In this document: piece after piece, positions 13,001 to 34,694 of the stretch
Position numbering within the stretch: the first letter of the stretch is position 1
Layout: each line of letters begins with the position of its first letter
DNA from: Iphione sp. A-MEVVRFRX5
Lineage: Eukaryota
Direction: 5' to 3'
Length of the DNA stretch: 64,000 bases
NCBI GenBank assembly: GCA_976226885.1
Contig: OZ320315.1
Span: forward strand, 35,774,001-35,838,000
The notes under the pieces: model-generated
The model's database searches: none
Told to the model about the DNA's origin: nothing
What the model saw: the letters and a program-made list of their open reading frames with translations, nothing else
Translations under genes and position numbers: made by a program

Positions 13001-16000
13001 TTTCATGTGATTGGTGTCTTTATTGGGCTGTATGTCGTACGATCTACAATAGTTATCAAAATCGTATTCATTTCACTATGTGATTGCTGATGACCAGCTT
13101 TTATGGGGTCTAATCTCTGAAGGGTTTGTCATGACATATATTCCTATGTTTAAACATATCCCATATATTGGAATTATTTGATTTTATCTATATTGTTAAC
13201 TGCCATAGTTTATAATCAAATCAGTCAGTTTTGTATAAGAAAAACACATGGGTTTCAAGACTCTACATATGTATATATGTGTGTTTTTCAGCTATGCCCA
13301 GAAGAGAGGGAGTCACCTGGTGCCGCACTGCAGGCGAATGCTTCACTTGCCTGTTTTGCATCAGAGACCGTGGCATTTGGATGCATGTTGAGGGGGTCTC
13401 TCACCTGCCTGACTTTTCGCTCAATCTTGTGGGAGGCTTTTCCAAAGTGGAACTCGGCTGCTCAGTGGTGAATGCGGCCGATGGTCTGTGGCGGCTCACA
13501 AGCCCACCTCTGACTGCTGCTGGCACGTATGAGCTGTGTATGGGGGAGAGACCTGTCAGGAATGGGGCCCTTGGGTACACTGTCCTCGTACTTGCCGCGG
13601 AGCCAGACCCTGGCTTCTGCTATGCCCATGGCGAGGGACTGTCCACTGTGTACTCAGCAGTGCCTGCCCAATTCAAAATTACCCTCCACGACCGCTACGA
13701 CAATGACATCCAACCCTCTAGGAAGATGATACTTTATCACCAAGATGTCCGTATTGTGCTGGTGTCAGGAACTCCGTGTGAGAGCCTCGATGTAGTACCC
13801 TCACTGAAGATCTCCGACTCGGACATAATTTGTTCTTACAAGGTGCCTTCCGAATTCCGTGGAAGGCTGAAAATTTCAGTGAGTACCATTTGAAATAAGA
13901 TGGAATAACTACCTTCACCACCTAAAAGATTATGAATTATTTCATGCATTTCCGTCGCGTATACAAGTCATGTCTATGTCCTCAATAAGAATGTGGAATA
14001 TAGGTTGTCTTAGTAACCATTTAGTTAGTTGTAACCATTCCATTAAACCAAACAAGGATGACAAAACGTCAAAACTCTCTTTATTGTCCCCCGCCTCATA
14101 GAGGGGGGGACATTAGGAATGCTGCCAGCTGGTGTCCCGACCATCCGTCACACTCTTGTGGGTCTTATAAGTGTTAAACCCTTCACTCAAAAAAACTGAT
14201 TTTAATATATGATATTGGTATATATGGCCCCATGGCACTGGGTAATTTTGGTAGTAATTCAAATAGTTTGAAGGTGAAATTATGGCAATTTTACTCTTTT
14301 CCTAACACACCTACAAACATACATACCTGGTTCAGGGGTTCCTAGGTCTGACAATGCACATACATACACACTCAGTGCTCAGTCATGCAGAACCGAGGGT
14401 TTGTAGCAGTCTGGTGCTCAGTGAGGCAGAACCGAGGTGGCTGTGCCCGGTCAGGCAGAACCGAGAGTTGTAAACCTGAAGGACTTAAACAAGTCTAGCC
14501 AACTACCCCCAAAACAAGCTGCCAATCAAGGTGGTTGTNNNNNNNNNNNNNNNNNNNNNNNNNNNNNNNNNNNNNNNNNNNNNNNNNNNNNNNNNNNNNN
14601 NNNNNNNNNNNNNNNNNNNNNNNNNNNNNNNNNNNNNNNNNNNNNNNNNNNNNNNNNNNNNNNNNNNCTCCCCCCCCCCCATCTTTATGGGCAGTTGATG
14701 GCGGGGGACAATAGACCTCACAGGTCCACACTCTTGTTCATTGTTAAATTAGTGACTTAACCATTGGCTTTTATCCCACTCTTTCTACATTGTACAGTGG
14801 TCCCTCCATAACCAACACTTTTAGTTTCTGTAGATTTCGTCAGGTAAATTGAACTTGTCCGACATTTCCAATTGACTTTTCACATTTGGTTCCCCCTGAG
14901 GTTATCGGATAAGCAATCATGCCGGTTATAAGCCCGTCAGTTAAGGGGGGAGATGACTGTATTCAGATTCACTTTAGATGTTCTTTGTCCTTAGTCTATT
15001 CACTTAAAAAGTTCAGTCCTTAACCTATCAATGGACAAAACATGCATTCCAGAAATGACATTCGGTCTCATTTTTGACTAATAGGGTCTCAAGTAGGGAC
15101 GAATGTTAAATGTTTTGCAGAAAAATATAGAGAGCATAACAGGTTTCTTAAAAATTCATCTACTTAGGTTTTCATCCATGGAGTGCATGCGAGGGGCAGT
15201 CCATACACAGCCCGCTGGACATCCTTGAAGAGCTTCAGTCAGCGACACCGAGAACTGCGCCGGGCACTCCAGACTATGAAGCGAGTCAATGGCCATGTTG
15301 ATCTTTGGGTAGGCCGCGATACCATATTGGAAGACACTTTTTACGTCTTCCAACAGATGGCACAGAAGAAAATTCCCATGCTGCATTATTCGACCATCGT
15401 ACACTTCAATGACGAGAAAGGTGTTGATGCTGGCGGCCTCACACGGTATGTACCAGAACTACTTACTTCTCTTCAACTTTGTATACATGTAATTTTTCAA
15501 AAAATAAAAAAGAATATTCGAGACCGATGATTTATTATTGCCAACGCCTCATAGAGAGGCACCAAGTGCCAATCTAGGTGGTTGTAGGGAGAGAGACCCC
15601 CCACCTCCTCCAGCCCTGCAAGCAATCAACCATGAAATGGGTCATTGAGGTGGGGCACACTAGACCTCAAAGGTCCAAGCTCTTGTTTGTGTACAGATTC
15701 ATATCTTATTGCAGCTTGGTCATATTACTCACTCACTTGAGATACTTTAGACAAAAATTATTTTAGATAACACATATGTAGAAAATGGTTAGCATCAAAG
15801 TACAGAAGAGATTTCCATGAAGTAATATGTATCTTTTCTCCTAGGGAGTGGTATCAGCTGCTGTCTCGGGCAATGTTCAATCCAAACTATGTGCTCTTCG
15901 AGGAAGTTGACGGTCGATGCTACAGGCCAAACACCAAATCTTGGGTCCAAGAGAACCACCTTGATCACTTTTACTACTGTGGACAGGTCTTCGCAAAGGC

Positions 16001-19280: not shown

Positions 19281-19721
19281 AGTTGGATGCCTCAATCTGC
19301 GTGTCAAATATCCATGTCACGTTGACCACTTTGTTGACTATGAAGACCATAAACTGACCCATCCGTGGAGGGGGGCTAAAAGACGTCTGCCGCTAGGTAA
19401 TGTACAAAGGTGTCACTGGCACCAGGTATCGCGTGAACATATTTGGCAATGTACCGAGATAGGAAACCACAGACATGGATTTCAACATTGACAGATTGCA
19501 TCATCCTGTGGCCCCTCTCCCATGTGTACATGTATTTTTGTCCCCCGCCTCATAGAGGGGGGGGGACATTAGGAATGCTGCCAGCTGGTGTCCCAACCAT
19601 CCGTCACACTCTTGTGGGTCTTATAAGTCTTAAACCTTTCACTCAAAAAAACTTATTTCAATATATGATATTCACCGATCGCTTCTCGCGAGTTAACCAC
19701 GCCCACCGCGAAACGTCACAG

Positions 19722-19749
19722 ACACGTGCTTCCGGCATAGACAAACAAA
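19722..19749 (+). promoter_or_regulatory. 28-bp subterminal inverted repeat (left), candidate promoter cassette
   Basis: ACACGTGCTTCCGGCATAGACAAACAAA, the exact reverse complement of 29649-29676. Contains an E-box and an ETS-like core, and lies 10 bp before the exonuclease ATG. Confidence 0.55.
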
Positions 19750-19759
19750 CCCATCCAAA

Positions 19760-22700
19760 ATGGCGCTGCATAGGCCGAAGACTGCGTTACTCAGTGATCT
19801 GCCACAGGGTATGAATCCGAAATGGATGCCCCATAAGCCTTCTTCTCGGCAGATAGTCCGCGCGACAGCTTTTGTCACGGGCTGTTTCGTACATGACGTG
19901 TCTCTGACATTTCTGGAGGCAGGAATTGAGGTTTTTGCTCGCTGCTACCGCAGTCAGCGGCGACGGGAGAAGCCCCACGAAGTGCGCCTGGACATAGGTG
20001 ACAGTAAAGTCACATTCTGCCACTGTTCCTGCACAGCTGGGTAAGTGTCACGGTCTTTTATAAATTCTGTGGTATCTATAGATATTGTGCGTTGTATCTG
20101 TAATGTTTTATTCAACTATCACATTCGCATTTTGCGAGCGGAGACTGTACTGTCACCGCCACCATGTGCTGTCAAGCCCACTGCTTCGTAGGTCTGCGCA
20201 CACTTTGCCAAGGTCGAACTGTCACTGTTGCTGATATATACTAGCCATATCTAAGTGTATGAGGCTTCTCTAATAATTTACTGAACTGTCATGTTTGTGT
20301 CACGTTCGTATTTTGCGAGCGGAGGCTGTACTGTCACCGCCGCCATGTGCTGTCAAGCCCACTGCTTCGTAGGTCTGCGCACACTTTGCCAAGGTCGAAC
20401 TGTCACTGTCTCTGATAAATGCTACCCGTATCCAAGTGTATGAGGCTTCTCTAATAAATTTACTGAACTGTCACGTTTGTGTCACGTTCGTATTTTGCGA
20501 GCAGAGGCTGTACTATGGTTAATTATACCGTTTATAGAACCTGTCACCGTCAGTATGTGTTGTTACGTTCATCTGTAGTTATAGAGCCACATGAGATGTA
20601 ACCAGCAGTGTGTCCTCTCCTGTGTTGTCTGCATACCTGTGTTTCACTTTGCCATTTGCTGTCCCTCTTTCATTTAAGGATTGCAGGAAACTGTGCCCAC
20701 ACTCTTGCCGTGGTGCTTGCACTGGCAGAGTGGCAGAAGCTGGGGTTCTCTCAGGCCCCTCAGCCTCTGTCATGCACCTCACTCCCACAGGTTTGGGACA
20801 AACCCCGGTGCAAGAAATCGCTGCCAGAATCTGCAACCGGGGTGTCATTTGCGAAGCCGACCACAAAGGACCGCAAGCGGAAACCACCCACTGCTACTTT
20901 TGTAGACAACAGGTAAGTACAGAACAATGATCCCTTATGTTCAGTGTTAAATTACTTCATTTTCTCATTTCACTGTTTGGAATGTTTCCTTTTCATCTTC
21001 ATGTTATTGTTTTATGGTTCTCATTGACAGTTACTGGTGTTGCAGCTGCGATACAAGGTAAGATATTCTGTGCTATAGAAAAAAATAGAATATTTCTGAT
21101 TATGAAATTCGTATTCTAATTTGATTGCAAAAACAGGAATTCGTCTTTGTACTTTAAGTATTAATTGTTTTCCTTATATTATCCCCAGGACTAAGGCCTC
21201 CAAGCACCTCCGCTTCGATGTCCTGCTGGACATTGAGGGAGGAAGTTCGTACCTCCTCCAGGGGCCTCATGTTGTGGTGGACACCGTTTGTGGTCCTGCT
21301 TACATGGGCAGCATGATGAGCTACCAGGTACGTTTTGGATATGAATAGGTATATGAAATCTGACATAGCATAGGAAATAGTTGTATTTATAAAATGCACT
21401 GTAAGACTCGGATAGAGTTGTTCAGTATTTAATGAAGAAATCTCAGTTTTAATTTTAATGTTACAGTTCCAGGAGTTGACCCCCTCTGTACTTGTCAGGG
21501 ACGCACCTCGGACGTCCTCAAAGTTGAATGTTACAGTTCCAGGAGTTGACCCCCTCTGTACTTGTCAGGGACGCACCTCGGACGTCGTTAATGTTGAATG
21601 TTACGTTTCCAGGAGTTGACCCCCTCTGTACTTGTCACGGACACACCTCGGACGTCCTCAAAGTTGAATGTTACAGTTCCACCAGTTGACACCCTCTGTA
21701 CTTGTCACGGACGCACCTCGGACGTCGTTAATGTTGAATGTTACGTTTCCAGGAGTTGACCCCCTCTGTACTTGTCACGGACACACCTCGGACGTCCTCA
21801 AAGTTGAATGTTACGTTTCCAGGAGTTGACCCCCTCGGTACTTGTCACGGACACACCTCGGACGTCCTCAAAGTTGAATGTTACGTTTCCAGGAGTTGAC
21901 CCCTCTGTACTTGTCACGGATGCACCTCGGACGTCGTTAATGTTGAATGTTACGTTTCCAGGAGTTGACCCCCTCTGTACTTGTCACGGACACACCTCGG
22001 ACGTCCTCAAAGTTGAATGTTACGTTTCCAGGAGTTGACCCCCTCTGTACTTGTCACGGACGCACCTCGGACGTCGTTAATGTTGAATGTTACGTTTCCA
22101 GGAGTTGACCCCCTCTGTACTTGTCACGGACACACCTCGGACGTCCTCAAAGTTGAATGTTACGTTTCCAGGAGTTGACCCCCTCTGTACTTGTCATGGA
22201 CACACCTCGGATGTCCTCAAAGTTGAATGTTACAGTTCCAGGAGTTGACCCCCTCTGTACTTGTCAGGGACGCACCTCGGACGTCCTCAAAGTTGAATGT
22301 TACGTTTCCAGGAGTTGACCCCCTCTGTACTTGTCACGGACACACCTCGGACGTCCTCAAAGTTGAATGTTACGTTTCCAGGAGTTGACCCCCTCTGTAC
22401 TTGTCACGGACACACCTCGGACGTCCTCAAAGTTGAATGTTACGTTTCCAGGAGTTGACCCCCTCTGTACTTGTCACGGACGCACCTCGGACGTCGTTAA
22501 TGTTGAATGTTACGTTTCCAGGAGTTGACCCCCTCTGTACTTGTCACGGACACACCTCGGACGTCCTCAAAGTTGAATGTTACGTTTCCAGGAGTTGACC
22601 CCCTCTGTACTTGTCACGGACACACCTCGGACGTCCTCAAAGTTGAATGTTACAGTTCCAGGAGTTGACCCCCTCTGTACTTGTCACGGACGCACCTCGG

Positions 22701-24843
22701 ATGCACTTGAAACAGGGTCTGGTGGTTCAGGGTCTGGTGGTGTGTCTCTTAGTCTTCCTGGGCTTCCTCACGATCTCTTATCAAGAGTGGCTTGAATGTG
22801 GACAAGTAGGCACAGACAGCCCAGACCTGGTTCACGGTCGCTGTGCCTGACAAGTCCAAGATGTTACTGAGGATTTGCCACTTCTTGATGCGGTTTATGG
22901 CCCTCTCAACATGCACCCGGTGCTTCGCGATGTCCCGTGTCTCGGACACGTCCTGCCCGGTCATCTGAGCACCGGTCCTGGCAAATGGTGGTATGTTGAG
23001 TCGAAGGCCATAATGCCGCAGATCGTCTTCAATGAGGAAGCCCTTATCCACCATCACCCCATCACCCGGCAGGAGATACCCGGACCTCAGCAGCTCCTCT
23101 GCCAGGTCGTAGAAGCCGCTGGCTCTGGTTATTTCCTTGTCGGATATTCCCCCCGTGAACAAGGTGGAGATAAAGATGATAGTACCACGGGGGTCACATC
23201 CGACCAAGGCCTTCCAGGTGTTGCTGGACTTGTAGTCCGAGTATGTCTGGCTCTGCCGGGTCAGGGATGATGGTCGCTGGGTCTTAAACTCGGTCCCGTC
23301 GAGAATCACCATTGTGCGTGGATACTCTGCGCGGAACTTCGGGGGCATGTTGGCAATGATGACGTCGCGGTGGGGGAACAGTGGCAGGCGACTGAAGCGC
23401 TGGTACATATAATTCACCCACCCACCAAACATAAGCGACGCATCCTGTCCTGAGATTCCGTAACGATGCCCCAAGTCCTTGCATTGTAATCCAAGGCGCA
23501 GTCTGCTCAGCACTAGCAGCAGCTGATCCTCAGCAGGTATTGTCACCAGGCATCTCACCTTATGGCTAAAGTGGATGGCGTCATAGACTTTCCCAGTGGG
23601 CACCAGAAACCTGAGCACACTGTTGAAAGTCTGCAACGTCAGTCCAGTGTAGTGGCCAATAAGGTCAGGGATGGGACTCCTGTTGACACTACTTAAGCTC
23701 ATCCTGTGAGCCTGTTGAGATCGAGCCCTGCTGCGCTGTGCTGCTAGCTGGGTTTGCAGACTGGCCTTTGCCCGGGCCATTCTCTCCATTTCAATGGAGA
23801 GTCTGGCAACCTCTGCCTGGGCTGCACGCAGGTCGTCCTTAAGGGCAACATTCTCGACAGTGACCGAGAGAACCTCCAGAGGATCGGCCCCTGTGAAAAG
23901 AGAACAATGTATTAGTCACTGTATGATTATAGTCAGTTATCAAGGGAATAGTCACATGCATCTATAATATAGTGTCAAATTTTCTTTGTAGGCCAAGTAC
24001 ATTGCTGAGTCGCAGGAGAAGACTGGACCCAATGCCCCCCTGGACCCATGTGGAGACATGGTGTTTCCACGGGACTTCGCCCGGGCACCGTGGATTACAC
24101 TACCGCCATGGGATCCAGACATGTGGCTCAGCGTGGCTGTCACCCTTCCACAGGCTGTCCAGCTGGAGCGTGACACCGGTGGGCAGTCTGCGTCTCCGCT
24201 GTGGTGGGAGGAGCGGAGGCGCAGGGTGACAGCCTCACATTTTGCCTCCATTATGAAGAGGAAGGCTGCCGTGTCACCAGCATTCCTACGGAACACATTT
24301 ACCCCCAAGCCCTTCAAGTCGGCGGCCACGCAGTATGGGACCAGCAGTGAAGAGGTGGCCCGGTTGGCTTTCCTGAGGACCCGGGCAGGAAGCCACTACC
24401 ACCATGTGGGGCTGGTGGTGAATCCGGCATTCCCTTTTCTTGCTGCGACTCCTGATGGCCGTCTCTGCACCAATGGCAAGACGGTCATCATGGAGATCAA
24501 GTGCCCATACTCTGCGAGGGACATGACCATCCCAGAGGCTTGCACCACCATCAAGAAGTTCTGCCTGGAACTGAAGGATGGGAAGCCTGTCATGTCCAGG
24601 TCGCATGACTACTGGTTCCAGGTGCAGGGCCAGTTGCTGGTGACAGGTGCAGACTTCTGTACCTTCATAGTGTACACGGCAAGAGACCTCTTCTCAGAGG
24701 ATATAGCCCCCTGCAGCGAGACGATGGCCCAGATGTTGGAAAAGCTGGGTAATTTCTGGCTTACCCATGCAAAGCCATATCTGGGTCAGCTTGCAGCTGA
24801 AGAGGCTGAGGAGGAGGAACTGCAGGGAGGGGAAGAGGTCTAA
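19760..24843 (+). CDS. Transposon SWIM-zinc-finger / YqaJ (lambda-exonuclease-like PD-(D/E)xK) protein, 501 aa
   Basis: Exons 19760-20040, 20679-20912, 21189-21327, 23992-24843 (1,506 nt, phases 2,2,0). SWIM-like CHCSCTAG|IAGNCAH is split by intron 1. YqaJ motifs TGGQSASPLWWEERRRRVTAS, FLAATPDG, MEIKCPY, YWFQVQGQL. Confidence 0.88.
20118..20515. repeat. ~181-bp tandem repeat, ~2.2 copies, in exonuclease intron 1
   Basis: ttttgcgagc recurs at ~20130, 20311 and 20493 with conserved intervening sequence. Confidence 0.9.
21458..22703 (+). repeat. 70-bp minisatellite, ~18 copies
   Basis: Unit ttacgtttccaggagttgaccccctctgtacttgtcacggacacacctcggacgtcctcaaagttgaatg, starting at 21461, 21531, 21601 and so on. 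Two variants alternate irregularly. Confidence 0.97.
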
Positions 24844-27800
24844 TTCTGTCACACTGACACACCTACAACAACCACGGGGGTCAACTGGTGGAACTGTAAC
24901 ATTCAACTCTGAGGACGTCCGAGGTGCGTCCGTGACAATAACAACGGGTGTCAACTGGTGGAACTGTAACATTCAACTTTGAGGACGTCCGAGGTGTGTC
25001 CGTGACAAGTACAGAGGGGGTCAACTCCTGGAAACGTAACATTCAACTTTGAGGACGTCCGAGGTGTGTCCGTGACAAGTACAGAGGGGGTCAACTCCTG
25101 GAAACGTAACATTCAACTGTAAGGACGTCCGAGATCTGTCTCCGACGCAACTGTCTCCTTTATTGTCATTGTGACTATTCCTGGGATTACTTACAATGAC
25201 TTTGTGTCTGGCAGCCCTGACCAATACACTCTGCTACTGCTGGAGGTGCCCCTGCTGCTGCTGAAGGGGCCCTAGCTGCTGCTGCTGAAGGTGCCCCTGC
25301 TGCTGCTGGAGGTGCCCTAGCTGCTGCTGCTGAAGGTGCCCTAGCTGCTGCTGCTGAAGGTGTCCTAGCTGCTGCTGCTGGAGGTGCCCCTGCTGCTGCT
25401 GAAGGTGCCCTAGCTGCTGCTGCTGGAGGTGCCCTTGCTGCTGCTGGAGGTGCCCCTGCTGCTGCTACTGGAGGTGCTGGCCCTTCTACTTGGAAGGTAG
25501 GCTGCCTGTTTCCAATTGATTGTACACATACTAATACTAGTGGGTCTCCACAAGGGTCACTTATGGGAATCATATGGGTTGTCTTGGTTTTTTTTTTATA
25601 AAGACTTAACATCAGTTTAATACCTTATGACATTACTTTTCATCTCAGATGTTACTTTCATTTAGAGAAAAATCAACTGCATATAGGTAGGTAAACTTGA
25701 TAGACTGGCATGGAAAAGAAAAACATTAATTGTCATTAACTTCCAGTAATATTTCTATTCACCTTATGATATTACTTTTCAACCAAAATCTTACTAACAT
25801 TTATATATAAAAACAACAAAGAGGTCTTCTTTCAAATAAAAGCATCTTTTATTCTTGATTAAATATCTTTAATATATATATATAACAAGTGTAAACAGTA
25901 AAAACAAATGTAAAAGAATCAAAATGTCAACAAGTGTAAACAAAAATAACAAGAATAAAAAAAAAAACTGTCTGGGTTAAATAATGTTCAATGTCCTTTT
26001 TAAAAAAATAAAAAATTCTTAGAAGAAGCCCATGAGGGCATCCATTATTGACTTATGCAGGTCATCTGCTGCTGCCGCTACCGCCTCTTCCTGTGGAACT
26101 GCAGGGTGGAGGAGGACCATCAAGTCCTCCTCCAACACCTCCCACACCCCATCTGTATCCTGGTGCAACGTAGGGGTGTGGGAGGCCCCTGGTGTCTCCT
26201 CCTCCTCCTCACTGTCAGAGTCAATCACAATTGGTGGCTCCACTTGCCAGTCTGCCGGTGGCCACTCAATGGCCGGCCACTGCATTTCCACCTGCTGTTG
26301 CTGTTGCTGTTGCTGTGGTAGCTGTGGTGGCTGCTGTTGCTGTTGCTGTGGTAGCTGTGGTGGCTGCTGTTGCTGTTGCTGTTGCTCCTGGAGTGCAGCC
26401 ACCTCCTCCTCCACCAGCACTATTCTCTGCTGAGTGATCCTCAGCTGCTGGTGGAGGAGGGCTAAAAGGGCAGCATCTGCCCCAGCCTCTTGGTGGCGCA
26501 GGAGGATGTATGCTTGCTCTGAAATAGAACAAAGAGTGTGACTGAGTAGTGCATCCCTTATATGTTTCCTGTACATAATCAGATTAGGTCAGGTACTGTT
26601 AGCCTAGGGGTGTCTGTGACATTAACAACAGGGGGGACACCTACTACAAGTGTAACATTCATCAAAAACAACGTGCGGTGTATGTGAGTCATATTTACGA
26701 GAAGGGACACCAGCAACAAGTGTAACATTCCACCTAAAATACGTGGGTGGGGTGTCCGTGACATTAACAACAGGGGGGACACCTACTACAAGTGTAACAT
26801 TCATCAAAAACAACGTGCGGTGTATGTGAGTCATATTTACGAGAAGGGGCACCAGCAACAAGTGTAACATTCCACCTAAAATACATGGGTGGGGTGTCCG
26901 TGACATTAACAACAGGGGGGACACCTACTACAAGTGTAACATTCATCAAAAACAACGTGCGGTGTATGTGAGTCATATTTACGAGAAGGGGCACCAGCAA
27001 CAAGTGTAACATTCCACCTAAAATACGTGGGTGGGGTGTCCGTGACATTAACAACAGGGGGGACACCTACTACAAGTGTAACATTCATCAAAAACAACGT
27101 GCGGTGTATGTGAGTCATATTTACGAGAAGGGGCACCAGCAACAAGTGTAACATTCCACCTAAAATACGTGGGTGGGGTGTCCGTGACATTAACAACAGG
27201 GGGGACACCTACTACAAGTGTAACATTCATCAAAAACAACGTGCGGTGTATGTGAGTCATATTTACGAGAAGGGGCACCAGCAACAAGTGTAACATTCCA
27301 CCTAAAATACGTGGGTGGGGTGTCCGTGACATTAACAACAGGGGGGACACCTACTACAAGTGTAACATTCAGCAAAAACAACGTATGTGTCAGTCACATA
27401 TATCATGAGGGGCATCTAGAATGAGGTTATATTATAAGTCAAACTTACCAGCAGCCTTGCGCCGCGCGCGGCGGAGGCGCTGCTTTGCTGCCTCCAATTG
27501 ATGGTATAATGGCTGCCTCTGCTTGGCAGCCCTCCATTTAGCCGTTCTGACCTTCCCGGGGGTGGGGTTTCCACGAGGCATTTTGCTGTAATGGAAAAGT
27601 CACACAACTGAGAACAGTCTTCAATAGCTGGGTTTTTTTTTTGTTGTTTTTTAAGCTTCTGCACTCACATCTGATGTAGTAGGGTGAGAGGAGTAAGATG
27701 TTCTTTGAATTTTCCAAAACAATACATAAATCAGCCAGTTATGACCAAAAATGTCTCCAACAATTTCATGTCAGTGGCAGTCTAAGCCAAGAAGTGAGCT

Positions 27801-29545
27801 GACCTACATTCAACTTGTTATTTTCATCAAATATTTCAGGATTGAGCTGCTAATGTATGTTAAACTACTGTCCTGTATGTGCTATGTACCTATATGCACA
27901 CTATGACTATGATTCTGGACAGAGAACATCAAAATAGCACAAGATTTTCCCAAAAATTGATGAGTGAAATTAAAAGTTACACTTTCTGCTGAAGGGGCAG
28001 ATCTGGTTCTTTAATCCGGATTCAACCAGCCGTGACCGGAAATCCATTTCCGGTGCAGTTTAAAAAAATGTTCGTAGGTGACAGTGTGGAGCTCAGAAAT
28101 CAGTTACGTATGTCTGAGACGCTTTCCTGTCGCAAAAACCTTCTAAACCGTGACATAAGTAATGATAATATGTTCAGGAATCAACTGTGACAGTTTCACC
28201 AAAAAATGAAAAATCTAAACCCTGGAGCGATTGATTACTTAAGGCTCTCGCACGCTACTGTCAGGGACAGGCTAGGTCAGTCCGCTGGGCAGCTACCCTT
28301 GCCATAGAAAAACACTGCAAACAGACACTTCCAGACATGCAAACGTGACAAAATGTGAGATGAGTACAGAAGACATGTGTAAGAAATGACTGTGACAATT
28401 ACAGGTGGAAAAAAAAATTCTACATGTCTGTGCGAGTAAAAACGTCACGGCCCATACGCAACTGTCAGCATCCACCACCGGGACCGCTGTCACAACCTCC
28501 ACCTCGCCCTCGAAAACCCTCCCGACAAGAGACTTCCAGACATGCAAACGTGACAAAATGTGAGATGAGTACAGAAGACATGTGTAAGAAATGACTGTGA
28601 CAATTACAGGTGGAAAAAAAAATTCTACATGTCTGTGCGAGTAAAAACGTCACGGCCCATACGCAACTGTCCGCACCCACCACCGGGACCGCTGTCACAA
28701 CCTCCACCTCGCCCTCGAAAACCCTCCCGAAAAGAGACTTCCAGACATGCAAACGTGACAAAATGTGAGATGAGTATAGAAGACATGTGTAAGAAATGAC
28801 TGTGACAATTACAGGTGAAAAAAAAAATTCTATATGTCTGTGCGAGTAAAAACGTCACGGCCCATACGCAACTGTCACCGATTCGCTGCAGCTGTGCTCA
28901 AAACGGGACTGATACACACATCTCTACACATGCAGACTTGATGAGACCTGATATAAGTGGAAGAAAAATGGAGAAGATAACTTACTTCGACTTTCTTCTT
29001 CTCTTTGGAGGAGGTGGAGCACTGCGGGGTTTGGGTGCCTTCCTCACCGGCCTCACTCTAGGATTCACTACCCCGGCTGGCAGAGGGTCAGGGTAGTCGT
29101 CTGTTGGGCCATCGCCACCAACAAAATGCTGAAAGAAGACAAACTTTCCATTAAAATTTCATTATCAATTATTATTCTTTTCATTTCAATTATTTTTTCT
29201 ATCACACATATAACTAGCATGACATAGATGACCTTCAAACTGTTAACAATGACAGTACTGACAGCTAGGATATCATGACTCACACAAACTACACAGATAT
29301 CACTTTCATTCAAATTATGTGTTATTAGACTAGACAGACATACTTACCTTGGAACAGACATATCTGTTGGTCTTGATTTTCTTGACGTTGAGTTTCTTGT
29401 GAGGCCGGCCACAGAGCTTGATCCACCTCATGCACTTCTCAAGCTCTGTGCCTGGTTTGGGGAAGGTCACCCAAGATAACCCTGCCATCCTCTCAGGGTA
29501 CCTGCTATCGTTCGTACATCCACCCCACTCGCAGTGTATAACCAT
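22749..29545 (-). CDS. THAP-HTH-DDE transposase (DDE_Tnp_4 / Harbinger-like), 597 aa
   Basis: Exons 29545-29348, 29128-28986, 25505-25195, 23890-22749 (1,794 nt, phases 0,2,1). THAP MVIHCEWGGC...VCSK|HFVGGDGPTDDYPDP, HTH LLLVLSRLRLG...LGHRYGIS, catalytic ILDGTE / VMVDKGF / RVHVERAI. The Ala/Pro exon 3 is inferred from phase compatibility only. Confidence 0.87.
24872..25133 (-). repeat. Same 70-bp minisatellite in inverted orientation, ~3.7 copies
   Basis: attcaac recurs at 24901, 24971, 25041 and 25111. The unit is the reverse complement of the 21458-22703 unit. Confidence 0.95.
25234..25476 (-). repeat. 21-24-bp coding tandem repeat (AAAG/RAP[P/S]) in the putative transposase exon 3
   Basis: Repeated gaaggtgccc(c/t)agctgctgct units that keep the reading frame. 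Confidence 0.85.
26019..27581 (-). CDS. Third transposon gene, unknown 210-aa protein (basic N-terminus, coiled coil, polyQ, acidic SIM-like tail)
   Basis: ATG at 27581. Exon 27581-27449 (donor GTAAGT) plus exon 26518-26019 (acceptor gttctatttcag), both phase 1, 633 nt open. AATAAA downstream near 25850. Confidence 0.65.
26607..27414. repeat. 142-bp tandem repeat, ~5.6 copies, in the intron of the third gene
   Basis: gtccgtgac at 26754, 26896, 27038, 27180 and 27322. The unit is internally a dimer, with GTAACATTC occurring twice. Confidence 0.95.
28325..28878. repeat. ~204-bp tandem repeat, ~2.7 copies, in transposase intron 2
   Basis: acttccagacatgc at 28328, 28532 and 28737. Confidence 0.93.
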
Positions 29546-29648
29546 TTTGGGCTGTGACAAGTACACAAAATTGATAAAAAAGGCGAAAACTGTCTCGGAC
29601 GATGCGTACGCGTGGTGCTGTCAGGACACTGTCACGGACGAGAAGGGC

Positions 29649-29676
29649 TTTGTTTGTCTATGCCGGAAGCACGTGT
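29649..29676 (-). promoter_or_regulatory. 28-bp subterminal inverted repeat (right)
   Basis: TTTGTTTGTCTATGCCGGAAGCACGTGT, about 100 bp upstream of the transposase ATG. Confidence 0.55.
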
Positions 29677-32600
29677 ACCGATTTCGAAACTGGCGCGCCA
29701 AACTAGGTCGCGCGCGCTGATTGGCCGAGACGCCTGTCACTCACGGAAAAGCGATCGGTGAATTGGTATATATGGCCCCATGGCACTGGGTAATTTTGGT
29801 AGTAATTCAAATATTTTGAAGGTGAAATTATACCAATTTTACTCTTTTCCTAACACACCTACAAACATACATACCTGGTTCAGGGGTTCTTAGGTCTGAC
29901 AATGCACATACATATACACTCAGTGCTCAGTCATGCAGAACCGAGGGTTTGTAGCAGTCTGGTGCTCAGTGAGGCAGAACCGAGGGGGCTGTGCCCAGTC
30001 AGGCAGAACCAAGAGTTGTAAACCTGAAGGACTTAAACAAGTCTAGCCAACTACCCTCAAAACAAGCGGCCAATCAAGGTGGTTGTAAGGAGAGAGAGAC
30101 ACTACACACACACACACACTCATTTTCTCTCTCTTTCTCTCCCCCCCCCCCTACATCTTTATGGGCAGTTGATGGCGGGGGGGGGGGGGGACAATAGACC
30201 TCACAGGTCCACACTCTTGTTCACATGGCGACACCCCCTGCTACAAAGAGACAATCTTTGACAGTTGAAGTTAAACCTCAGCGTTGTGAAAGCAGTACAG
30301 TAGACGCCGAGGTCGTGGTCACGCCAGCATACAACACACCTCGCACATACAGCCAGTTGAGCTTGATAAATGCAACTAGCGCCTCCATCCAACGGTCATC
30401 AATGAAAACTTTTTTTATCTACTTTTGTACCACTCAGCAAGAGTTCTTTACCTGTTCCTGGCATCTCACCAAGGCGTGACCCAAGGCGTTGACTCCTGTG
30501 GGCTCAACCAACCCAGGTGCAACTCAAGTCACACATGAGCCTTAAGCCTGCGCTGTACTGTATGAACAACAGTGACCCATCACTGGGAGGCCCGGACATT
30601 GTCCAACGTTTTATTGCATTGTAGCTGCGTTGATTTGGAGGTTAAATATAATGCAGAGGATCGCGTTTATTGCCCACTGATCAATTACATGTATGTCGTT
30701 GATTGCTAGCACTACTATAACCCTAGCACATTTCCCGACTACAAGTCGTAGTCTTTTTATGCTAAGCGATGGGTCAGTCGAGTTCATCTTAATAAGCATC
30801 CAGAGTATGGACCTAGTGTCTGCTTGTTTGCAAGAAATATATGTCGATTATATACCTAACATATGCCTTGACTACTCTTATATAGTCCAAGTATAATATA
30901 GAAGCGAAAATCAGTTTAGAGTAAGTAACTCATCCTGCGGGAAACTCAATTAGGAGAGCAACCGTATATTAAGGACACTTTTTTGGTAGACCCAATACTA
31001 CAAAATATACATGTATAAGTAAACCAACCCTGTGATAAGGGCAAAATTGGATGTTCCCTCCAGTGGTCGCATTAAAGGGTGGCTACTATGATATTCATCA
31101 ATATGTATTACCCTGCACCAATGTGGTGACTTGCGAATCCCGTCAAATAAGCCTGAAACCAAATTTGACTATACTGGTATAACGAGGGGACACTGTACTT
31201 CCCTTACAAATCAGGTAGTTCAGATGTGTCGTTTTGACATATCAGGTAGATATCAAGTCATTCTCTACTAAGTATTTACATGCTTGATGCCTTAAAATAC
31301 GTTACTCAAAAAAAACCCACTAACTGTATTAGCGTCGATCTGCTATTTATACATGTATGATTTCGAGTATAACTATTGTATCTTATCTATGAACTGTTTC
31401 TCTTGCCACTTCCTTGTGATAAAATGTTTGCGGTAACACTCACACTGTGATACACAGACGTTTGCTTACTGTGGTGGTGCTGCATTACCCAGGTAGAGAA
31501 GTACTTAACGGTCTTTTCTGAGTGCTTATTTTTAGCTTGTTAAACATTATCAAAATGACATAAGCTACTATATGGCACTGATACCGCGTAAAGAGTGAAT
31601 GATTCTTGGCTATGAATATTTAACAAAGCTACTGTACTGATTACTAAAGATTGACTTGCCTTTCAGTGTCTGATGTTTGATCGCAAGACTAAACATGAGT
31701 ACACAATATTTTGTTTAATCATTTAACGTGCAATAGTCGGGTCTTCTTTTACTGGCATTATATTGAATATACATGACGCTAATTTAACTGTCATCGATCT
31801 ACAAGTGTGCTTTCATCCTGGTATGGAAATGTACCCTACCACGAAGATTAATCGCGGCAAATGATAACCTGCATGTATTTCAATAAATTATTTCCATATT
31901 CATATTGAGCCTCTTTTATTTCGTTGATGAATCATTATCATTGGAGATCAGCGTACTGGTCTCCAGTATATAAGCAGGGTAAAACGTGCTAGCCACGTCC
32001 CTCTACTGGGTGGTACTCTGGTGGGTTTCCAGTGTAAGGAGGGAGGGGGGGGGCCTCTACTTGGTCTGACCTTAACGTTGCTTTGGAGAGGCCGTGGATG
32101 TGGTTGGTGGGGGTTAAATGACCAGGGCATGCTCTAGGCATAAATAGCAGGAATGTCTGTGTGTGTACTGCCCTGATTTTCACAGTGTAGCTCACAGCTG
32201 CATCTTCCCTTAATACAGAGCTTAAGTATCATCTACAGGGAATTTAATTTTGAAGAAATGTCTACATTGCCATCTCCTTCATACCATGAAAATGTATATC
32301 ATTTCAATCGAATAAGCAATTTTTTCACACGACACTGAAGCAATGCATATTGCTCATATACAAGTCTTGAGGCATCCCAACTTCATCATTTACTTAGTTA
32401 GCTGGTGTGATTACAGCAACATGACGCCTCTTCTACTGTAAAGTTACTGACAATTCTGGTTGCCATACTTTAAGCTTCATAAAAAATAAATTATGGTTGA
32501 GATTCGTATAGAAACAGGGTTACACTCAAGGCTATAAATAAACTTGCCTCTGGCAAAATAGGCTTGTGCTGGCCATGTAAGTGTCTCATTTGTAATGCGA

Positions 32601-33122
32601 CCCCTCCGAACTTATATCAACCCATGGCAATAGATTTTATATGCCAACTTAAAAGTAATATACTTTGAGAAAATGTAATACTTAACGTAGGATAATTTAT
32701 ATAGTTCGAGTTAGAACAGTGACTTTCGACTCCTGAACAAAGCTTGTGCAATGCTCTTTAGCCTTCCTTTTGCTACGCTACTTCAATTTGGACCAAACGA
32801 CGTTATGTGAAGACTCCTTCTGCCCTGATCTCTGAGCACTGCCAGCTGTATACGAAGAAAACCTTCCGTTTCACATCGTCAGATTATATCTGGTGCATCG
32901 TCCCCATTTACCTCAGATAGCAGCAGATTATAAATGAATGCAACAGGCCTAAGTGACAAAGTGCCTGAAAGAATTCCTGAGATCACAGAGACAAAAACAG
33001 TAGCTAAGATCACTATAACACATTTTAATCAAACGACTGGCCAATCTATTCGATACAGCATGTAATAAATGGGAATCAACATATACTTGTCAACAGTATT
33101 TGATAAAACTTTCGTAAACAGC

Positions 33123-34694
33123 TTAACTTGCATTATTAGATTGTTTCTTCTTTTTAAGTTTCTTTTTCTTCTTCAATGGTGCGCTGAATGCTGCTGCCTC
33201 TTTCTTCGTTCCCTCGTCCACGTCACTCTCATCACTGGGGTCGACTACTGGCATCGCTGCGGTCTCCTCTCCTCCTTCCTCTTCAGCAGTCAGGTTCCAA
33301 TGTTTACTGACCACTGGGTTCTTCTTAAGGTTGAGTACCCGGTGTTCACGCTCACCACCCACGGCAATAAGTAAGGGCGAGTCCATGCAGGTGTCCACAC
33401 AGTGCAAGTCACCCATGTTCAGGCTCTTCTTGAGGACGAGGTCAGGTTGTGTCTGTCGAATGTCCCACACTTTCAACGTCTTGTCGGCCGAAACAGTCAC
33501 CACACAGCCGGGCAGATGGTGGTCGATGGCCAGACCAGTGGTGGCCTTAGCATGCGCCTCCCACGTCGCGACGGGTTCCTCTGTCCGCACGTCCATACAG
33601 AACACCTTGCCGTCCTCCGTTGCCGCCAAGAAATGATAAGGGCTGTGACGATTCCATCTCACCTGTTCCACGTCCGCAGACACCGACCAGCTCTTGTTGG
33701 ATTCGCTCGCACTGCGACAGTCAAACACGCGGGCCGTCTTATCAAAGGAACCCGCCAGAAGAGACTGGGGCTCGAAGGGATGCCATTCAATCGACTGAAC
33801 CTTCTCCTCCATGCTAATCGAGGAGGCCATCACCCCCTCCTGTAGGTCCCAAAGTCCGATAGAAGAGTCAGCCGAACCACTGGCCAGTACCTGGCGCTGC
33901 TTTTGGTTCCAGGACAAGGTCAGAACAGCATCACTGTGACCTTTCGCTGAGACTTTCTTCTTTTTCTTACCCTTCTTCTTGGATATCCCGGCCAGGGTGA
34001 AGGCTGGCTCCATCGCTTCAGTGACGTCCATATCCCAGATGTCAATTGATGGTTCCATTGAGCCCATCGCTAGGTAGTTGCCAGGCTTACTTTCACTTGG
34101 GTCGAAATCGAGCCACTCAATGGCGAGAGGAAAAACTGGGAGCAGGACATCGTGATGACAATACATGTTTGATGCCTCCTCCTCGTATACATGGACTTCC
34201 AGAGTGTTGTAGTCCCCGTGGACTTTTGCGACAGCTATCAAACTATCGTCTGGAAGTATTTCTAGCTCTTCTGCTTCACTATCTTCGTCTTCATCATCTA
34301 AATATGGATCATCTTTGCTACTGGGAAATGAAGTTATTCCACCAACAGCTAGCGGAGCTTCTTCGTCACTGTTTTCCTCGTCATAATCATCCAACCCATA
34401 TTTCTTTGCTACATCCTCTTCGGATTCCGACTCACCACTCGTATCACTCTGTTCCTCCGTTTTTTCTTCCACGTGAGACTTCTCTTTTCGTCCCTTCTTT
34501 CTTTTTTGCGCACTGCCTTCCCCGGGAACATTATCGTCGTTGTCAGATGAACGGTCACTATCTTCCAATTCTTCTAGTTTATCACCATGTTCACCTATTA
34601 ACCTTTTCAGGTCATTTGCATCAAGTTTAACACGGTCAGGATTTCGTTTGGCAACACCACGACGTATCCATTTTATACAAGGTACAACATTCAT
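33123..34694 (-). CDS. PWP1: Periodic tryptophan protein 1 homologue (WD40), 523 aa, intronless CDS
   Basis: N-terminus MNVVPCIKWIRRGVAK, acidic region with KYGLDDYD, LEVHVYEEEASNMYCHHDVLLPVFPLAIEWL, WD40 repeats (GHSDAVLTLSW, LASGSADSSIGLWDL), Lys-rich C-terminus. Confidence 0.93.
   Translation of the reverse strand: MNVVPCIKWIRRGVAKRNPDRVKLDANDLKRLIGEHGDKLEELEDSDRSSDNDDNVPGEGSAQKRKKGRKEKSHVEEKTEEQSDTSGESESEEDVAKKYGLDDYDEENSDEEAPLAVGGITSFPSSKDDPYLDDEDEDSEAEELEILPDDSLIAVAKVHGDYNTLEVHVYEEEASNMYCHHDVLLPVFPLAIEWLDFDPSESKPGNYLAMGSMEPSIDIWDMDVTEAMEPAFTLAGISKKKGKKKKKVSAKGHSDAVLTLSWNQKQRQVLASGSADSSIGLWDLQEGVMASSISMEEKVQSIEWHPFEPQSLLAGSFDKTARVFDCRSASESNKSWSVSADVEQVRWNRHSPYHFLAATEDGKVFCMDVRTEEPVATWEAHAKATTGLAIDHHLPGCVVTVSADKTLKVWDIRQTQPDLVLKKSLNMGDLHCVDTCMDSPLLIAVGGEREHRVLNLKKNPVVSKHWNLTAEEEGGEETAAMPVVDPSDESDVDEGTKKEAAAFSAPLKKKKKLKKKKQSNNAS

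What the first reader, a model, noticed from the sequence alone, without database searches (positions are those of the whole stretch)
21328..25194. Transposase and exonuclease genes are mutually interleaved
The two genes start at opposite ends and run through each other. The catalytic DDE exon (23890-22749, minus) lies inside exonuclease intron 3 (21328-23991). The catalytic YqaJ exon (23992-24843, plus) lies inside transposase intron 3 (25194-23891). Both reconstructions give exact frames (501 and 597 aa). I know of no description of this interlocked layout for ISL2EU elements. It forces antisense overlap of the pre-mRNAs but not of the spliced CDSs, and makes it hard to lose one gene by simple deletion.
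Basis: partly seen in the sequence, partly recalled or inferred. Interest (0 to 1): 0.8.

Follow-up and report, generated by a model that had tools for sequence, protein, structure and literature searches.

The report
Interleaved two-gene ISL2EU transposon, family-wide layout
The two genes of this 10-kb fish "jumping gene" do run through each other, each catalytic exon sitting in the other gene's last intron, but six related elements from other fish, amphioxus, an acorn worm and molluscs share the layout, so it is a family trait and not an oddity of this copy.

Summary
Window 19672-29761 is an intact 10,090-bp ISL2EU DNA transposon. It has 13-bp terminal inverted repeats and an AT target duplication, and I examined 11 further full-length copies.

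- A 501-aa SWIM-like/YqaJ exonuclease on the plus strand.
- A 597-aa THAP-HTH-DDE transposase on the minus strand.

The genes start at opposite ends. The DDE exon lies in exonuclease intron 3 and the YqaJ exon lies in transposase intron 3. Two 3' splice sites sit back to back in a 101-bp spacer.

Support for the models:
- Every GT/AG site is kept in all 12 copies.
- The spliced models align end to end, across every junction, with full-length homologues from other animals.
- Intron positions match those homologues, and intron phase matches at the two junctions I checked.

No RNA run could be listed for this genome, so the junctions are not shown by reads.

The same layout is present in amphioxus, a hemichordate, a bivalve, a gastropod and two other teleosts. 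One sea-anemone element is convergent but not interleaved. So the layout is standard for bilaterian ISL2EU. I found no written description of it. The "hard to delete" argument is weak. This scan had already noted the element, its arrays and a third ORF on this same window.

The parts
19672..29761 (.). Whole ISL2EU-type DNA transposon, 10,090 bp. It is flanked by AT at 19670-19671 and at 29762-29763.
   Evidence: The own-genome search finds many copies at 90-99% identity whose matches start at window ~19670 and end at ~29764. The ends and flanks of 12 copies were aligned: the right flank is AT in 12/12 and the left flank is AT in 11/12.
19672..19684 (+). Left terminal inverted repeat, TCACCGATCGCTT.
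   Evidence: Identical to the reverse complement of 29749-29761.
29749..29761 (-). Right terminal inverted repeat.
19722..19749 (+). 28-nt block ACACGTGCTTCCGGCATAGACAAACAAA, 10 nt upstream of the exonuclease ATG. The same block lies at the other end. Promoter-like (inference).
   Evidence: The alignment of the two ends shows the block is invariant. The reading of its E-box-like CACGTG and ETS-like CTTCCGG motifs is from my own knowledge and was not tested.
29649..29676 (-). The same 28-nt block, about 100 nt upstream of the transposase ATG.
19760..20040 (+). Exonuclease exon 1. It holds the ATG and the first half of a SWIM-like CxC...CxH finger.
   Evidence: tblastn to P0126/P0131 aa 6-98 (E 6e-8 and 1e-7). 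The GT donor is kept in 12/12 copies.
20679..20912 (+). Exonuclease exon 2. It holds the second half of the SWIM-like finger and a conserved PQxWDKPR block.
   Evidence: tblastn E 2e-20 to P0126 aa 100-176. AG/GT are kept in 12/12 copies. Pfam SWIM matches the homologues just below threshold across this junction.
21189..21327 (+). Exonuclease exon 3.
   Evidence: tblastn to P0125 aa 96-149, E 7e-7. The junction GSMMSYQ|AKYI aligns with GSALSYH|GPLI and GSGLSYH|ANLM in homologues.
21328..23991 (+). Exonuclease intron 3. It contains the 70-bp array and the whole DDE exon on the opposite strand.
23992..24843 (+). Exonuclease exon 4: the YqaJ / lambda-exonuclease-type nuclease domain with the motif PDG...EIK.
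   Evidence: Pfam YqaJ E 6.6e-14 and Viral_alk_exo E 3.4e-7. Translation.
29348..29545 (-). Transposase exon 1: the ATG and the first part of the THAP zinc finger, ending ...VCSK.
   Evidence: Pfam THAP E 1.4e-4, covering profile positions 1-56 of 87. tblastn E 1e-17 to 1e-24 to aa 1-67 of 12 homologues.
28986..29128 (-). Transposase exon 2: the end of THAP (HFVGG...) and a basic PPPPKRRRKSK stretch.
   Evidence: tblastn to aa ~61-99 of homologues. AG/GT are kept in 12/12 copies.
25195..25505 (-). Transposase exon 3: a linker with an Ala/Pro-rich tandem-repeat expansion. It ends ...CQTQSH plus the first base of a split Trp codon.
   Evidence: Both ends align with exon 3 of Glandiceps P0001 (QPVTSVT...CQTEGK-W). 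Its length is 242-416 nt in 12 copies and is always 2 mod 3, and the transposase CDS has no internal stop in 10 of the 12. Skipping this exon would break the frame.
23891..25194 (-). Transposase intron 3. It contains the whole YqaJ exon on the opposite strand and the short inverted 70-bp array.
22749..23890 (-). Transposase exon 4: coiled-coil, HTH_Tnp_4 and the DDE_Tnp_4 catalytic domain.
   Evidence: Pfam DDE_Tnp_4 E 5e-42 and HTH_Tnp_4 E 4e-11. Translation. 99.7% identical among copies.
23891..23991 (.). 101-bp spacer holding the two 3' splice sites back to back, each with its polypyrimidine tract.
   Evidence: Amphioxus, Glandiceps and Mercenaria show a short spacer of the same kind, with an acceptor readable on each strand.
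21457..22701 (+). 70-bp tandem array, 17.8 copies, directly behind the transposase stop codon and inside exonuclease intron 3.
24865..25140 (-). The same 70-bp unit in inverted orientation, 3.9 copies, directly behind the exonuclease stop codon and inside transposase intron 3.
   Evidence: reciprocal minus-strand matches. Comparable arrays were not found in the other species' elements.

Best explanation
This is an intact, recently amplified autonomous ISL2EU (PIF/Harbinger-ISL2EU-Spy group) cut-and-paste transposon. It carries the two genes typical of that group: a THAP-HTH-DDE transposase and a SWIM-like/YqaJ exonuclease.

Each gene starts next to one terminus and is read inwards. Each has four exons, and the last and largest exon carries the enzyme domain. 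The two last exons have swapped places relative to a simple convergent arrangement. As a result each pre-mRNA must be transcribed across the other gene's catalytic exon, which it removes as part of its own intron 3. The two acceptor sites lie back to back in a 101-bp spacer.

Shown here:
- The element's boundaries and AT target duplication.
- The exon structure, supported by homology and by splice sites kept in 12 copies.
- The same architecture in six other ISL2EU loci from three phyla.

Inferred:
- Both genes are driven from similar promoter blocks near the two ends.
- The primary transcripts overlap antisense over at least 2.1 kb (22749-24843) while the coding exons do not overlap.
- The nuclease processes DNA ends during or after excision.

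The interleaving is an inherited family architecture. Whether it is selected (for coupled or antisense regulation) or is a frozen accident is not known.
For: - Boundaries, copies and AT duplication.
- Domains: DDE_Tnp_4 E 5e-42, HTH_Tnp_4 E 4e-11, YqaJ E 6.6e-14; THAP E 1.4e-4.
- Collinear tblastn of full-length homologues onto the window: transposase 29545-29348, 29146-29039, 23885-22767; exonuclease 19778-20041, 20683-20913, 21175-21336, 24025-24783.
- Exact 501-aa and 597-aa models.
- All splice dinucleotides are kept in 12/12 copies. The transposase is intact in 10/12, the exonuclease in 6/12 and both in 5/12.
- Alignment across the junctions. The split Trp codon at the transposase exon 3/4 junction has the same position and phase in the Glandiceps element. 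The exonuclease exon 3/4 junction has the same position and phase 0 in Mercenaria.
- Intronless 1.7-kb contigs from other organisms encode the full SWIM-YqaJ protein (L030) and the full THAP-HTH-DDE protein (L031) with no partner gene inside. This is as expected of spliced mRNAs.
- The same interleaving occurs in L013 amphioxus, L014 Mercenaria, L015 Glandiceps, L016 Coilia, L018 Phoxinus and L032 Batillaria.
Against: - There is no transcript evidence from this species: no run could be listed.
- Both core exons also carry internal ATGs (23789 and 24058). NCBI annotators called short, core-only versions of the nested partner in amphioxus (232 aa) and Mercenaria (306 aa). Short isoforms are therefore not excluded.
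- The library type of the two intronless Logan contigs was not verified.
- Exon 3 of the transposase is mostly a tandem repeat whose unit is a multiple of 3. Frame conservation there is partly automatic.
- Higher identity of exons than of non-coding parts (99.4% against 94.8%) is driven by two variable internal segments. Most short introns are about as conserved as the exons, so it says little about selection.
- One cnidarian locus has a convergent layout that is not interleaved.
Confidence: 0.85

Rival explanations
1. The two core exons are independent, divergently transcribed genes. They are driven by a bidirectional promoter in the short spacer and translated from their internal ATGs (346-aa DDE protein, 261-aa YqaJ protein). 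The THAP and SWIM exons near the ends would then be separate small genes or relics.
For: Internal ATGs exist at 23789 and 24058. NCBI gene models in amphioxus and Mercenaria give core-only products for the nested partner.
Against: Both reading frames stay open upstream of those ATGs, right up to strong acceptor sites with polypyrimidine tracts. Homologues carry the N-terminal domains and the cores in one protein, and they align across the junctions. Intronless contigs encode the joined proteins. A transposase without its THAP domain would lack the DNA-binding part described for ISL2EU (PMC4122938). The spacer is made of two polypyrimidine tracts, not obvious promoter sequence.
Confidence: 0.07
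2. The interleaving is a selected regulatory device. Convergent promoters in the termini force sense/antisense pre-mRNA pairs over both catalytic exons. In this family an intronic array is also complementary to a 3'-UTR array. The result would be double-stranded RNA and small-RNA self-limitation, or mutually exclusive transcription of the two genes from one copy.
For: The layout is retained in elements whose proteins are only 37-50% identical and that live in three phyla. A 28-nt block is shared upstream of both ATGs. Inverted 70-bp arrays lie behind both stop codons.
Against: Nothing here measures RNA. Retention can be explained by the rarity of rearrangements that keep both genes working. 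The inverted arrays are not found in the other species' elements. A cnidarian relative manages without interleaving.
Confidence: 0.2
3. The pattern is an artefact of nested insertions or of assembly: one element carrying a transposase was hit by another carrying the nuclease.
For: Nested transposons are common in fish genomes. Another repeat abuts the right end at about 29763.
Against: Twelve copies at different chromosomal sites share the same order, the same ends and the AT duplication. The same order recurs in other phyla. There are no internal TIR pairs around either core exon.
Confidence: 0.01

Closest known systems
ISL2EU superfamily of Repbase (ISL2EU group of the PHIS superfamily; Han et al. 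2014, PMC4122938; Han et al. 2015, PMC4482050; Etchegaray et al. 2022, PMC9179366)
   Same: The transposase has THAP, HTH and DDE (DDE_Tnp_4) domains. There is a second gene with a YqaJ exonuclease domain. The target duplication is 2-bp AT. The host is an animal (teleost).
   Different: This element is 10.1 kb, against a reported mean of about 4.8 kb. Its TIR starts TC, not the usual GG. It has long internal tandem arrays and a third open frame. The papers describe 'two ORFs' and do not mention that they are interleaved. The layout shown here in seven loci is not in their text.
PIF/Harbinger elements
   Same: A related DDE_Tnp_4 transposase plus a second, separately encoded protein needed with it. 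The two genes are often in opposite orientation.
   Different: In Harbinger the second protein is a Myb/SANT DNA-binding protein, not a nuclease. The target duplication is 3 bp (TWA). The transposase has no THAP domain.
KolobokE elements (PMC9587614)
   Same: A DDE transposon associated with a PD-(D/E)xK lambda-exonuclease-like nuclease.
   Different: In KolobokE the nuclease is fused downstream of the transposase in one protein of an unrelated superfamily. It is not a separate interleaved gene.
Lambda Exo / RecE / YqaJ phage recombination nucleases
   Same: The Pfam YqaJ fold family and the PD...ExK catalytic motif (PDG...EIK) are present in exon 4.
   Different: Here the nuclease is fused to a SWIM-like zinc finger, encoded by a spliced eukaryotic gene, and has no annealing-protein partner in the element.
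Interleaved or nested host gene pairs in animal genomes (from my own knowledge, e.g. those catalogued in Drosophila annotation)
   Same: Exons of two opposite-strand genes alternate along the DNA, so each gene has an exon in an intron of the other.
   Different: Those are host genes at fixed loci. Here the pair is the whole coding content of a mobile element and travels with it across phyla.

Membership tests
ISL2EU (PHIS superfamily) | DDE transposase of the IS5/Harbinger type (DDE_Tnp_4) with an HTH | tested here: met
   Pfam DDE_Tnp_4 E 5.2e-42 and HTH_Tnp_4 E 4.3e-11 on 22749-23789(-). The D (ILDGTEF), D (VMVDKGF) and RxxxE (RVHVE) motifs are visible in the translation.
ISL2EU (PHIS superfamily) | THAP zinc finger at the N-terminus of the transposase | tested here: met
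   Pfam THAP E 1.4e-4 on exon 1 alone. This is a partial domain, 23.0 bits against a cut-off of 23.9. tblastn E down to 1e-24 to the THAP parts of 12 homologues. The join to the DDE exon is inferred from splice sites and homology, not from RNA.
ISL2EU (PHIS superfamily) | Second gene encoding a YqaJ-domain exonuclease | tested here: met
   Pfam YqaJ E 6.6e-14. The 501-aa spliced model aligns over 478 aa with P0126, E 4e-114.
ISL2EU (PHIS superfamily) | 2-bp target-site duplication, AT | tested here: met
   AT on the right flank in 12/12 copies and on the left flank in 11/12.
ISL2EU (PHIS superfamily) | TIRs that usually begin with GG | tested here: not met
   The TIR is TCACCGATCGCTT. PMC4482050 says 'usually', so this is a variant and not an exclusion.
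ISL2EU (PHIS superfamily) | Placement of the transposase inside the ISL2EU clade rather than the Harbinger or Spy clades | not tested
   No tree with Repbase reference transposases was built because none were available. Support is indirect: the best relatives are THAP+DDE proteins that lie next to YqaJ genes.
Autonomous (potentially active) element | Both reading frames intact, both ends present, young copies | tested here: met
   The window copy has both spliced frames open. Five of 12 copies do. The core exons of the copies are 99-100% identical. Activity itself is not testable with these tools.

The most novel reading that the evidence does not exclude
Mutual interleaving of the transposase and nuclease genes is an ancient, actively maintained control architecture of ISL2EU elements. 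Promoters in the two termini fire towards each other. Every copy therefore makes complementary pre-mRNAs over both catalytic exons, giving built-in double-stranded-RNA or transcription-interference control of the element's own dosage. No eukaryotic cut-and-paste transposon is known to be organised this way.
Probability: 0.2. Interest if true: 0.75.

Novelty: new member of a known kind. Interest (0 to 1): 0.5.

Why it matters
The element itself is an ordinary, if large and young, ISL2EU transposon. The useful result is the general one. In three animal phyla the two ISL2EU genes are not side-by-side 'ORFs', as the literature draws them. They are a mutually interleaved pair with back-to-back acceptor sites.

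This has a practical consequence. Genome annotators call one full gene and a truncated partner (seen in amphioxus and Mercenaria). Surveys that score 'two intact ORFs' will misjudge which families are potentially active.

It also gives a concrete, testable system for asking whether obligatory antisense transcription regulates a DNA transposon. And it offers a candidate pair of proteins for testing what a lambda-exonuclease-type nuclease does in eukaryotic cut-and-paste transposition, which the field lists as unknown (PMC4482050).

Tried and rejected
- RNA evidence: two run searches (the core of both genes, kind rna; the DDE exon alone, kind any) listed no run. Read laying was therefore never used and the junctions remain unconfirmed by reads.
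- A 27-nt mini-exon at 21031-21057 with good AG/GT sites keeps the frame. It is not needed: homologues align without a gap between exons 2 and 3.
- Purifying selection from exon versus intron identity: exons 99.4%, non-coding 94.8%. The difference comes from two variable internal segments, so I do not use it as evidence of coding.
- Conservation of the inverted 70-bp arrays in other species' elements: not found. They are specific to this fish family and not part of the general architecture.
- Look-up of the eel protein P0112 found no record.
- The beetle YqaJ locus L033 has no transposase nearby and says nothing about layout.
- Literature: five searches and seven papers read for any mention of interleaving, nesting, introns or orientation of the ISL2EU genes found none. 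Figures and Repbase records could not be read, so prior depiction is not excluded.
- Nested-insertion or assembly artefact: rejected because 12 copies and 6 other species share the order.
- No structure or complex prediction was run, because no claim here rests on one.


Full report
**What is in the window.**
ORF listing and Pfam show two large open frames:
- a 346-aa frame on the minus strand (22749-23789) with HTH_Tnp_4 and DDE_Tnp_4 (E 5e-42);
- a 261-aa frame on the plus strand (24058-24843) with YqaJ (E 6.6e-14).

Their starts face each other. Both frames stay open upstream of the first ATG, as far as strong 3' splice sites. These are ttctcttttcacag|GG at 23891/23890 on the minus strand and ttttctttgtag|GCC at 23991/23992 on the plus strand. 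Two acceptors face away from each other across only 101 bp. Any upstream exons must therefore lie beyond the other gene's exon.

**The element.**
A search of the window's own genome with 19500-27500 and 27400-34000 finds many copies at 90-99% identity. Their matches begin at about 19670 and end at about 29764. I fetched and stitched 11 full copies. All 12, counting the window, begin TCACCGATCGCTT and end with its reverse complement. The right flank is AT in 12/12 and the left flank is AT in 11/12.

The element is therefore window 19672-29761 (10,090 bp). Copies range from 9.8 to 11.6 kb because the internal tandem arrays vary. The 2-bp AT duplication, the THAP-HTH-DDE transposase and the YqaJ gene are the published hallmarks of ISL2EU (PMC4482050, PMC4122938, PMC9179366). 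The TIR starts TC rather than the usual GG.

**The upstream exons are real coding exons of the same two genes.**
A word search with the DDE exon found full-length THAP+HTH+DDE proteins of about 500 aa from a hemichordate, bivalves, amphioxus and fishes. tblastn of 12 of them onto the window places them as follows:
- aa 1-67 at 29545-29348;
- aa ~61-99 at 29146-29039, for 10 of the 12;
- aa ~135 to the end at 23885-22767.

Exon 1 alone matches Pfam THAP.

A search with the YqaJ exon found 417-487-aa relatives, some named SWIM-type. They map collinearly to 19778-20041, 20683-20913, 21175-21336 and 24025-24783.

- Exonuclease: 19760-20040, 20679-20912, 21189-21327, 23992-24843, giving 501 aa.
- Transposase: 29545-29348, 29128-28986, 25505-25195, 23890-22749, giving 597 aa.

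Alignment with homologues runs straight across the junctions:
- ...GSMMSYQ|AKYIAES aligns with GSALSYH|GPLIEPI and GSGLSYH|ANLMECV.
- ...CQTQSH-W-ADPLEVL aligns with Glandiceps CQTEGK-W-IEPIDIL.

The split Trp codon has the same phase in the Glandiceps genomic sequence. A CxC...CxH SWIM-like finger is complete only when exonuclease exons 1 and 2 are joined. The homologues match Pfam SWIM across that junction, just below the cut-off.

Transposase exon 3 is the homologue of a short linker exon into which an Ala/Pro-rich tandem repeat has expanded. Without it, exons 2 and 4 are out of frame.

**Copies.**
All eight exons keep their AG and GT dinucleotides in 12/12 copies. Exon 3 of the transposase is 242 to 416 nt long and always 2 mod 3. 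This is partly automatic, because the repeat unit is a multiple of 3. The spliced transposase frame is intact in 10/12 copies, the exonuclease in 6/12 and both in 5/12. Core exons are 99-100% identical among copies. This is a young, probably still active family.

**Is the layout special?**
No. I fetched the genomic loci of annotated relatives and mapped both proteins on them.

| Locus | Organism | First gene (strand, exons) | Second gene (strand, exons) |
|---|---|---|---|
| L013 | Amphioxus | Transposase (+): 10001-10198, 10579-10788, 11170-11274, 12614-13747 | Exonuclease (-): 16211-15933, 15148-14897, 14602-14480, 12589-11765 |
| L014 | Mercenaria | Exonuclease (+): 10001-10282, 10914-11147, 11502-11663, 12968-13765 | Transposase (-): 19461-19246, 14307-14158, 12866-11856 |

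Glandiceps (L015), Coilia (L016), Phoxinus (L018, a decayed copy) and the gastropod Batillaria (L032) show the same order. In amphioxus, Glandiceps and Mercenaria the two acceptors can be read back to back in a short spacer.

NCBI's own gene tables show one gene nested in the other for amphioxus and Mercenaria. They call only a truncated, core-only product for the inner one.

The single exception is a sea-anemone locus (L017). There the exonuclease (9356-11278, +) and the decayed transposase (about 14587-12951, -) converge without crossing.

Two 1.7-kb contigs from other organisms encode the whole SWIM-YqaJ protein and the whole THAP-HTH-DDE protein without interruption and without the partner exon. 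This is what spliced mRNAs would look like. I could not verify the library type.

**Literature.**
The papers held describe ISL2EU as having 'two ORFs' drawn as boxes. They say the role of the second ORF is unknown. I found no text on interleaving, nesting, introns or orientation. Repbase records and figures were not readable, so a prior depiction is possible.

**How it most likely works.**
Shown:
- the structure described above;
- the intact catalytic motifs (DDE; PDG...EIK);
- the AT duplication.

Inferred:
- Each gene is driven from its own end. A 28-nt block, ACACGTGCTTCCGGCATAGACAAACAAA, lies 10 nt upstream of the exonuclease ATG and about 100 nt upstream of the transposase ATG.
- Transcription is convergent.
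- The pre-mRNAs are complementary over at least 22749-24843, while no CDS exons overlap.
- Consensus poly(A) signals appear first at 21459-21433 (minus strand) and at 25835 (plus strand). If the latter is used, the exonuclease 3' UTR would overlap transposase exon 3.
- In this fish family a 70-bp array follows each stop codon in the same sense. Each pre-mRNA therefore carries one array in its last intron and the complementary one in its 3' UTR. The other species lack such arrays.

A deletion inside either intron 3 can remove one catalytic exon alone. A central deletion, however, would take both.

**Verdict.**
The thing is a new member of a known superfamily. The interleaved layout is a conserved feature of bilaterian ISL2EU elements that appears to be undescribed. 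Transcript evidence from this species is the missing piece.

Noticed in passing
window 26019-26576 (-), with a possible first exon at 27432-27581 (-): A 185-aa frame (Gln-rich, acidic tail) lies inside transposase intron 2 on the same strand. It is open as a single uninterrupted match in all 11 other copies, but only 52-66% identical at protein level, while the two enzyme genes are about 99% identical. Its only Pfam matches are below threshold (TFIIA, Androgen_recep) over its Gln-rich stretch.
   Followed up: partly
window 25506-26600 and 27385-28320: These two internal segments are far more divergent among copies (87% and 95%, with many gaps) than the rest of the element (98-100%). This suggests subfamilies or recombination between them.
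   Followed up: partly
window 26607-27384, 28323-28877, 20119-20514: There are further tandem arrays inside introns of the element: 142 bp x 5.5, 205 bp x 2.7 and 181 bp x 2.2. The 142-bp unit shares a GTGTCCGTGAC...GTAACATTCA core with the 70-bp unit. Copy number differs among copies and accounts for the 9.8-11.6 kb size range.
   Followed up: no
window 29763-30220: A different, high-copy repeat (about 460 bp, about 94% identical at many loci) abuts the right end of the element. The transposon seems to have landed in or next to it.
   Followed up: no
L013 (amphioxus) and L014 (Mercenaria) gene tables: Public annotation gives a full-length model for only one of the two interleaved genes and a truncated core-only product (232 aa, 306 aa) for the nested one. 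In L013 the whole element lies inside an intron of a 5523-aa AAA-ATPase gene.
   Followed up: partly
L017 (Actinostola) 9356-14587: This cnidarian ISL2EU-like locus has the two genes convergent and not interleaved, and most of the exonuclease sits in one exon. It may show the layout before the two last exons changed places, but it is a single, decayed example.
   Followed up: partly
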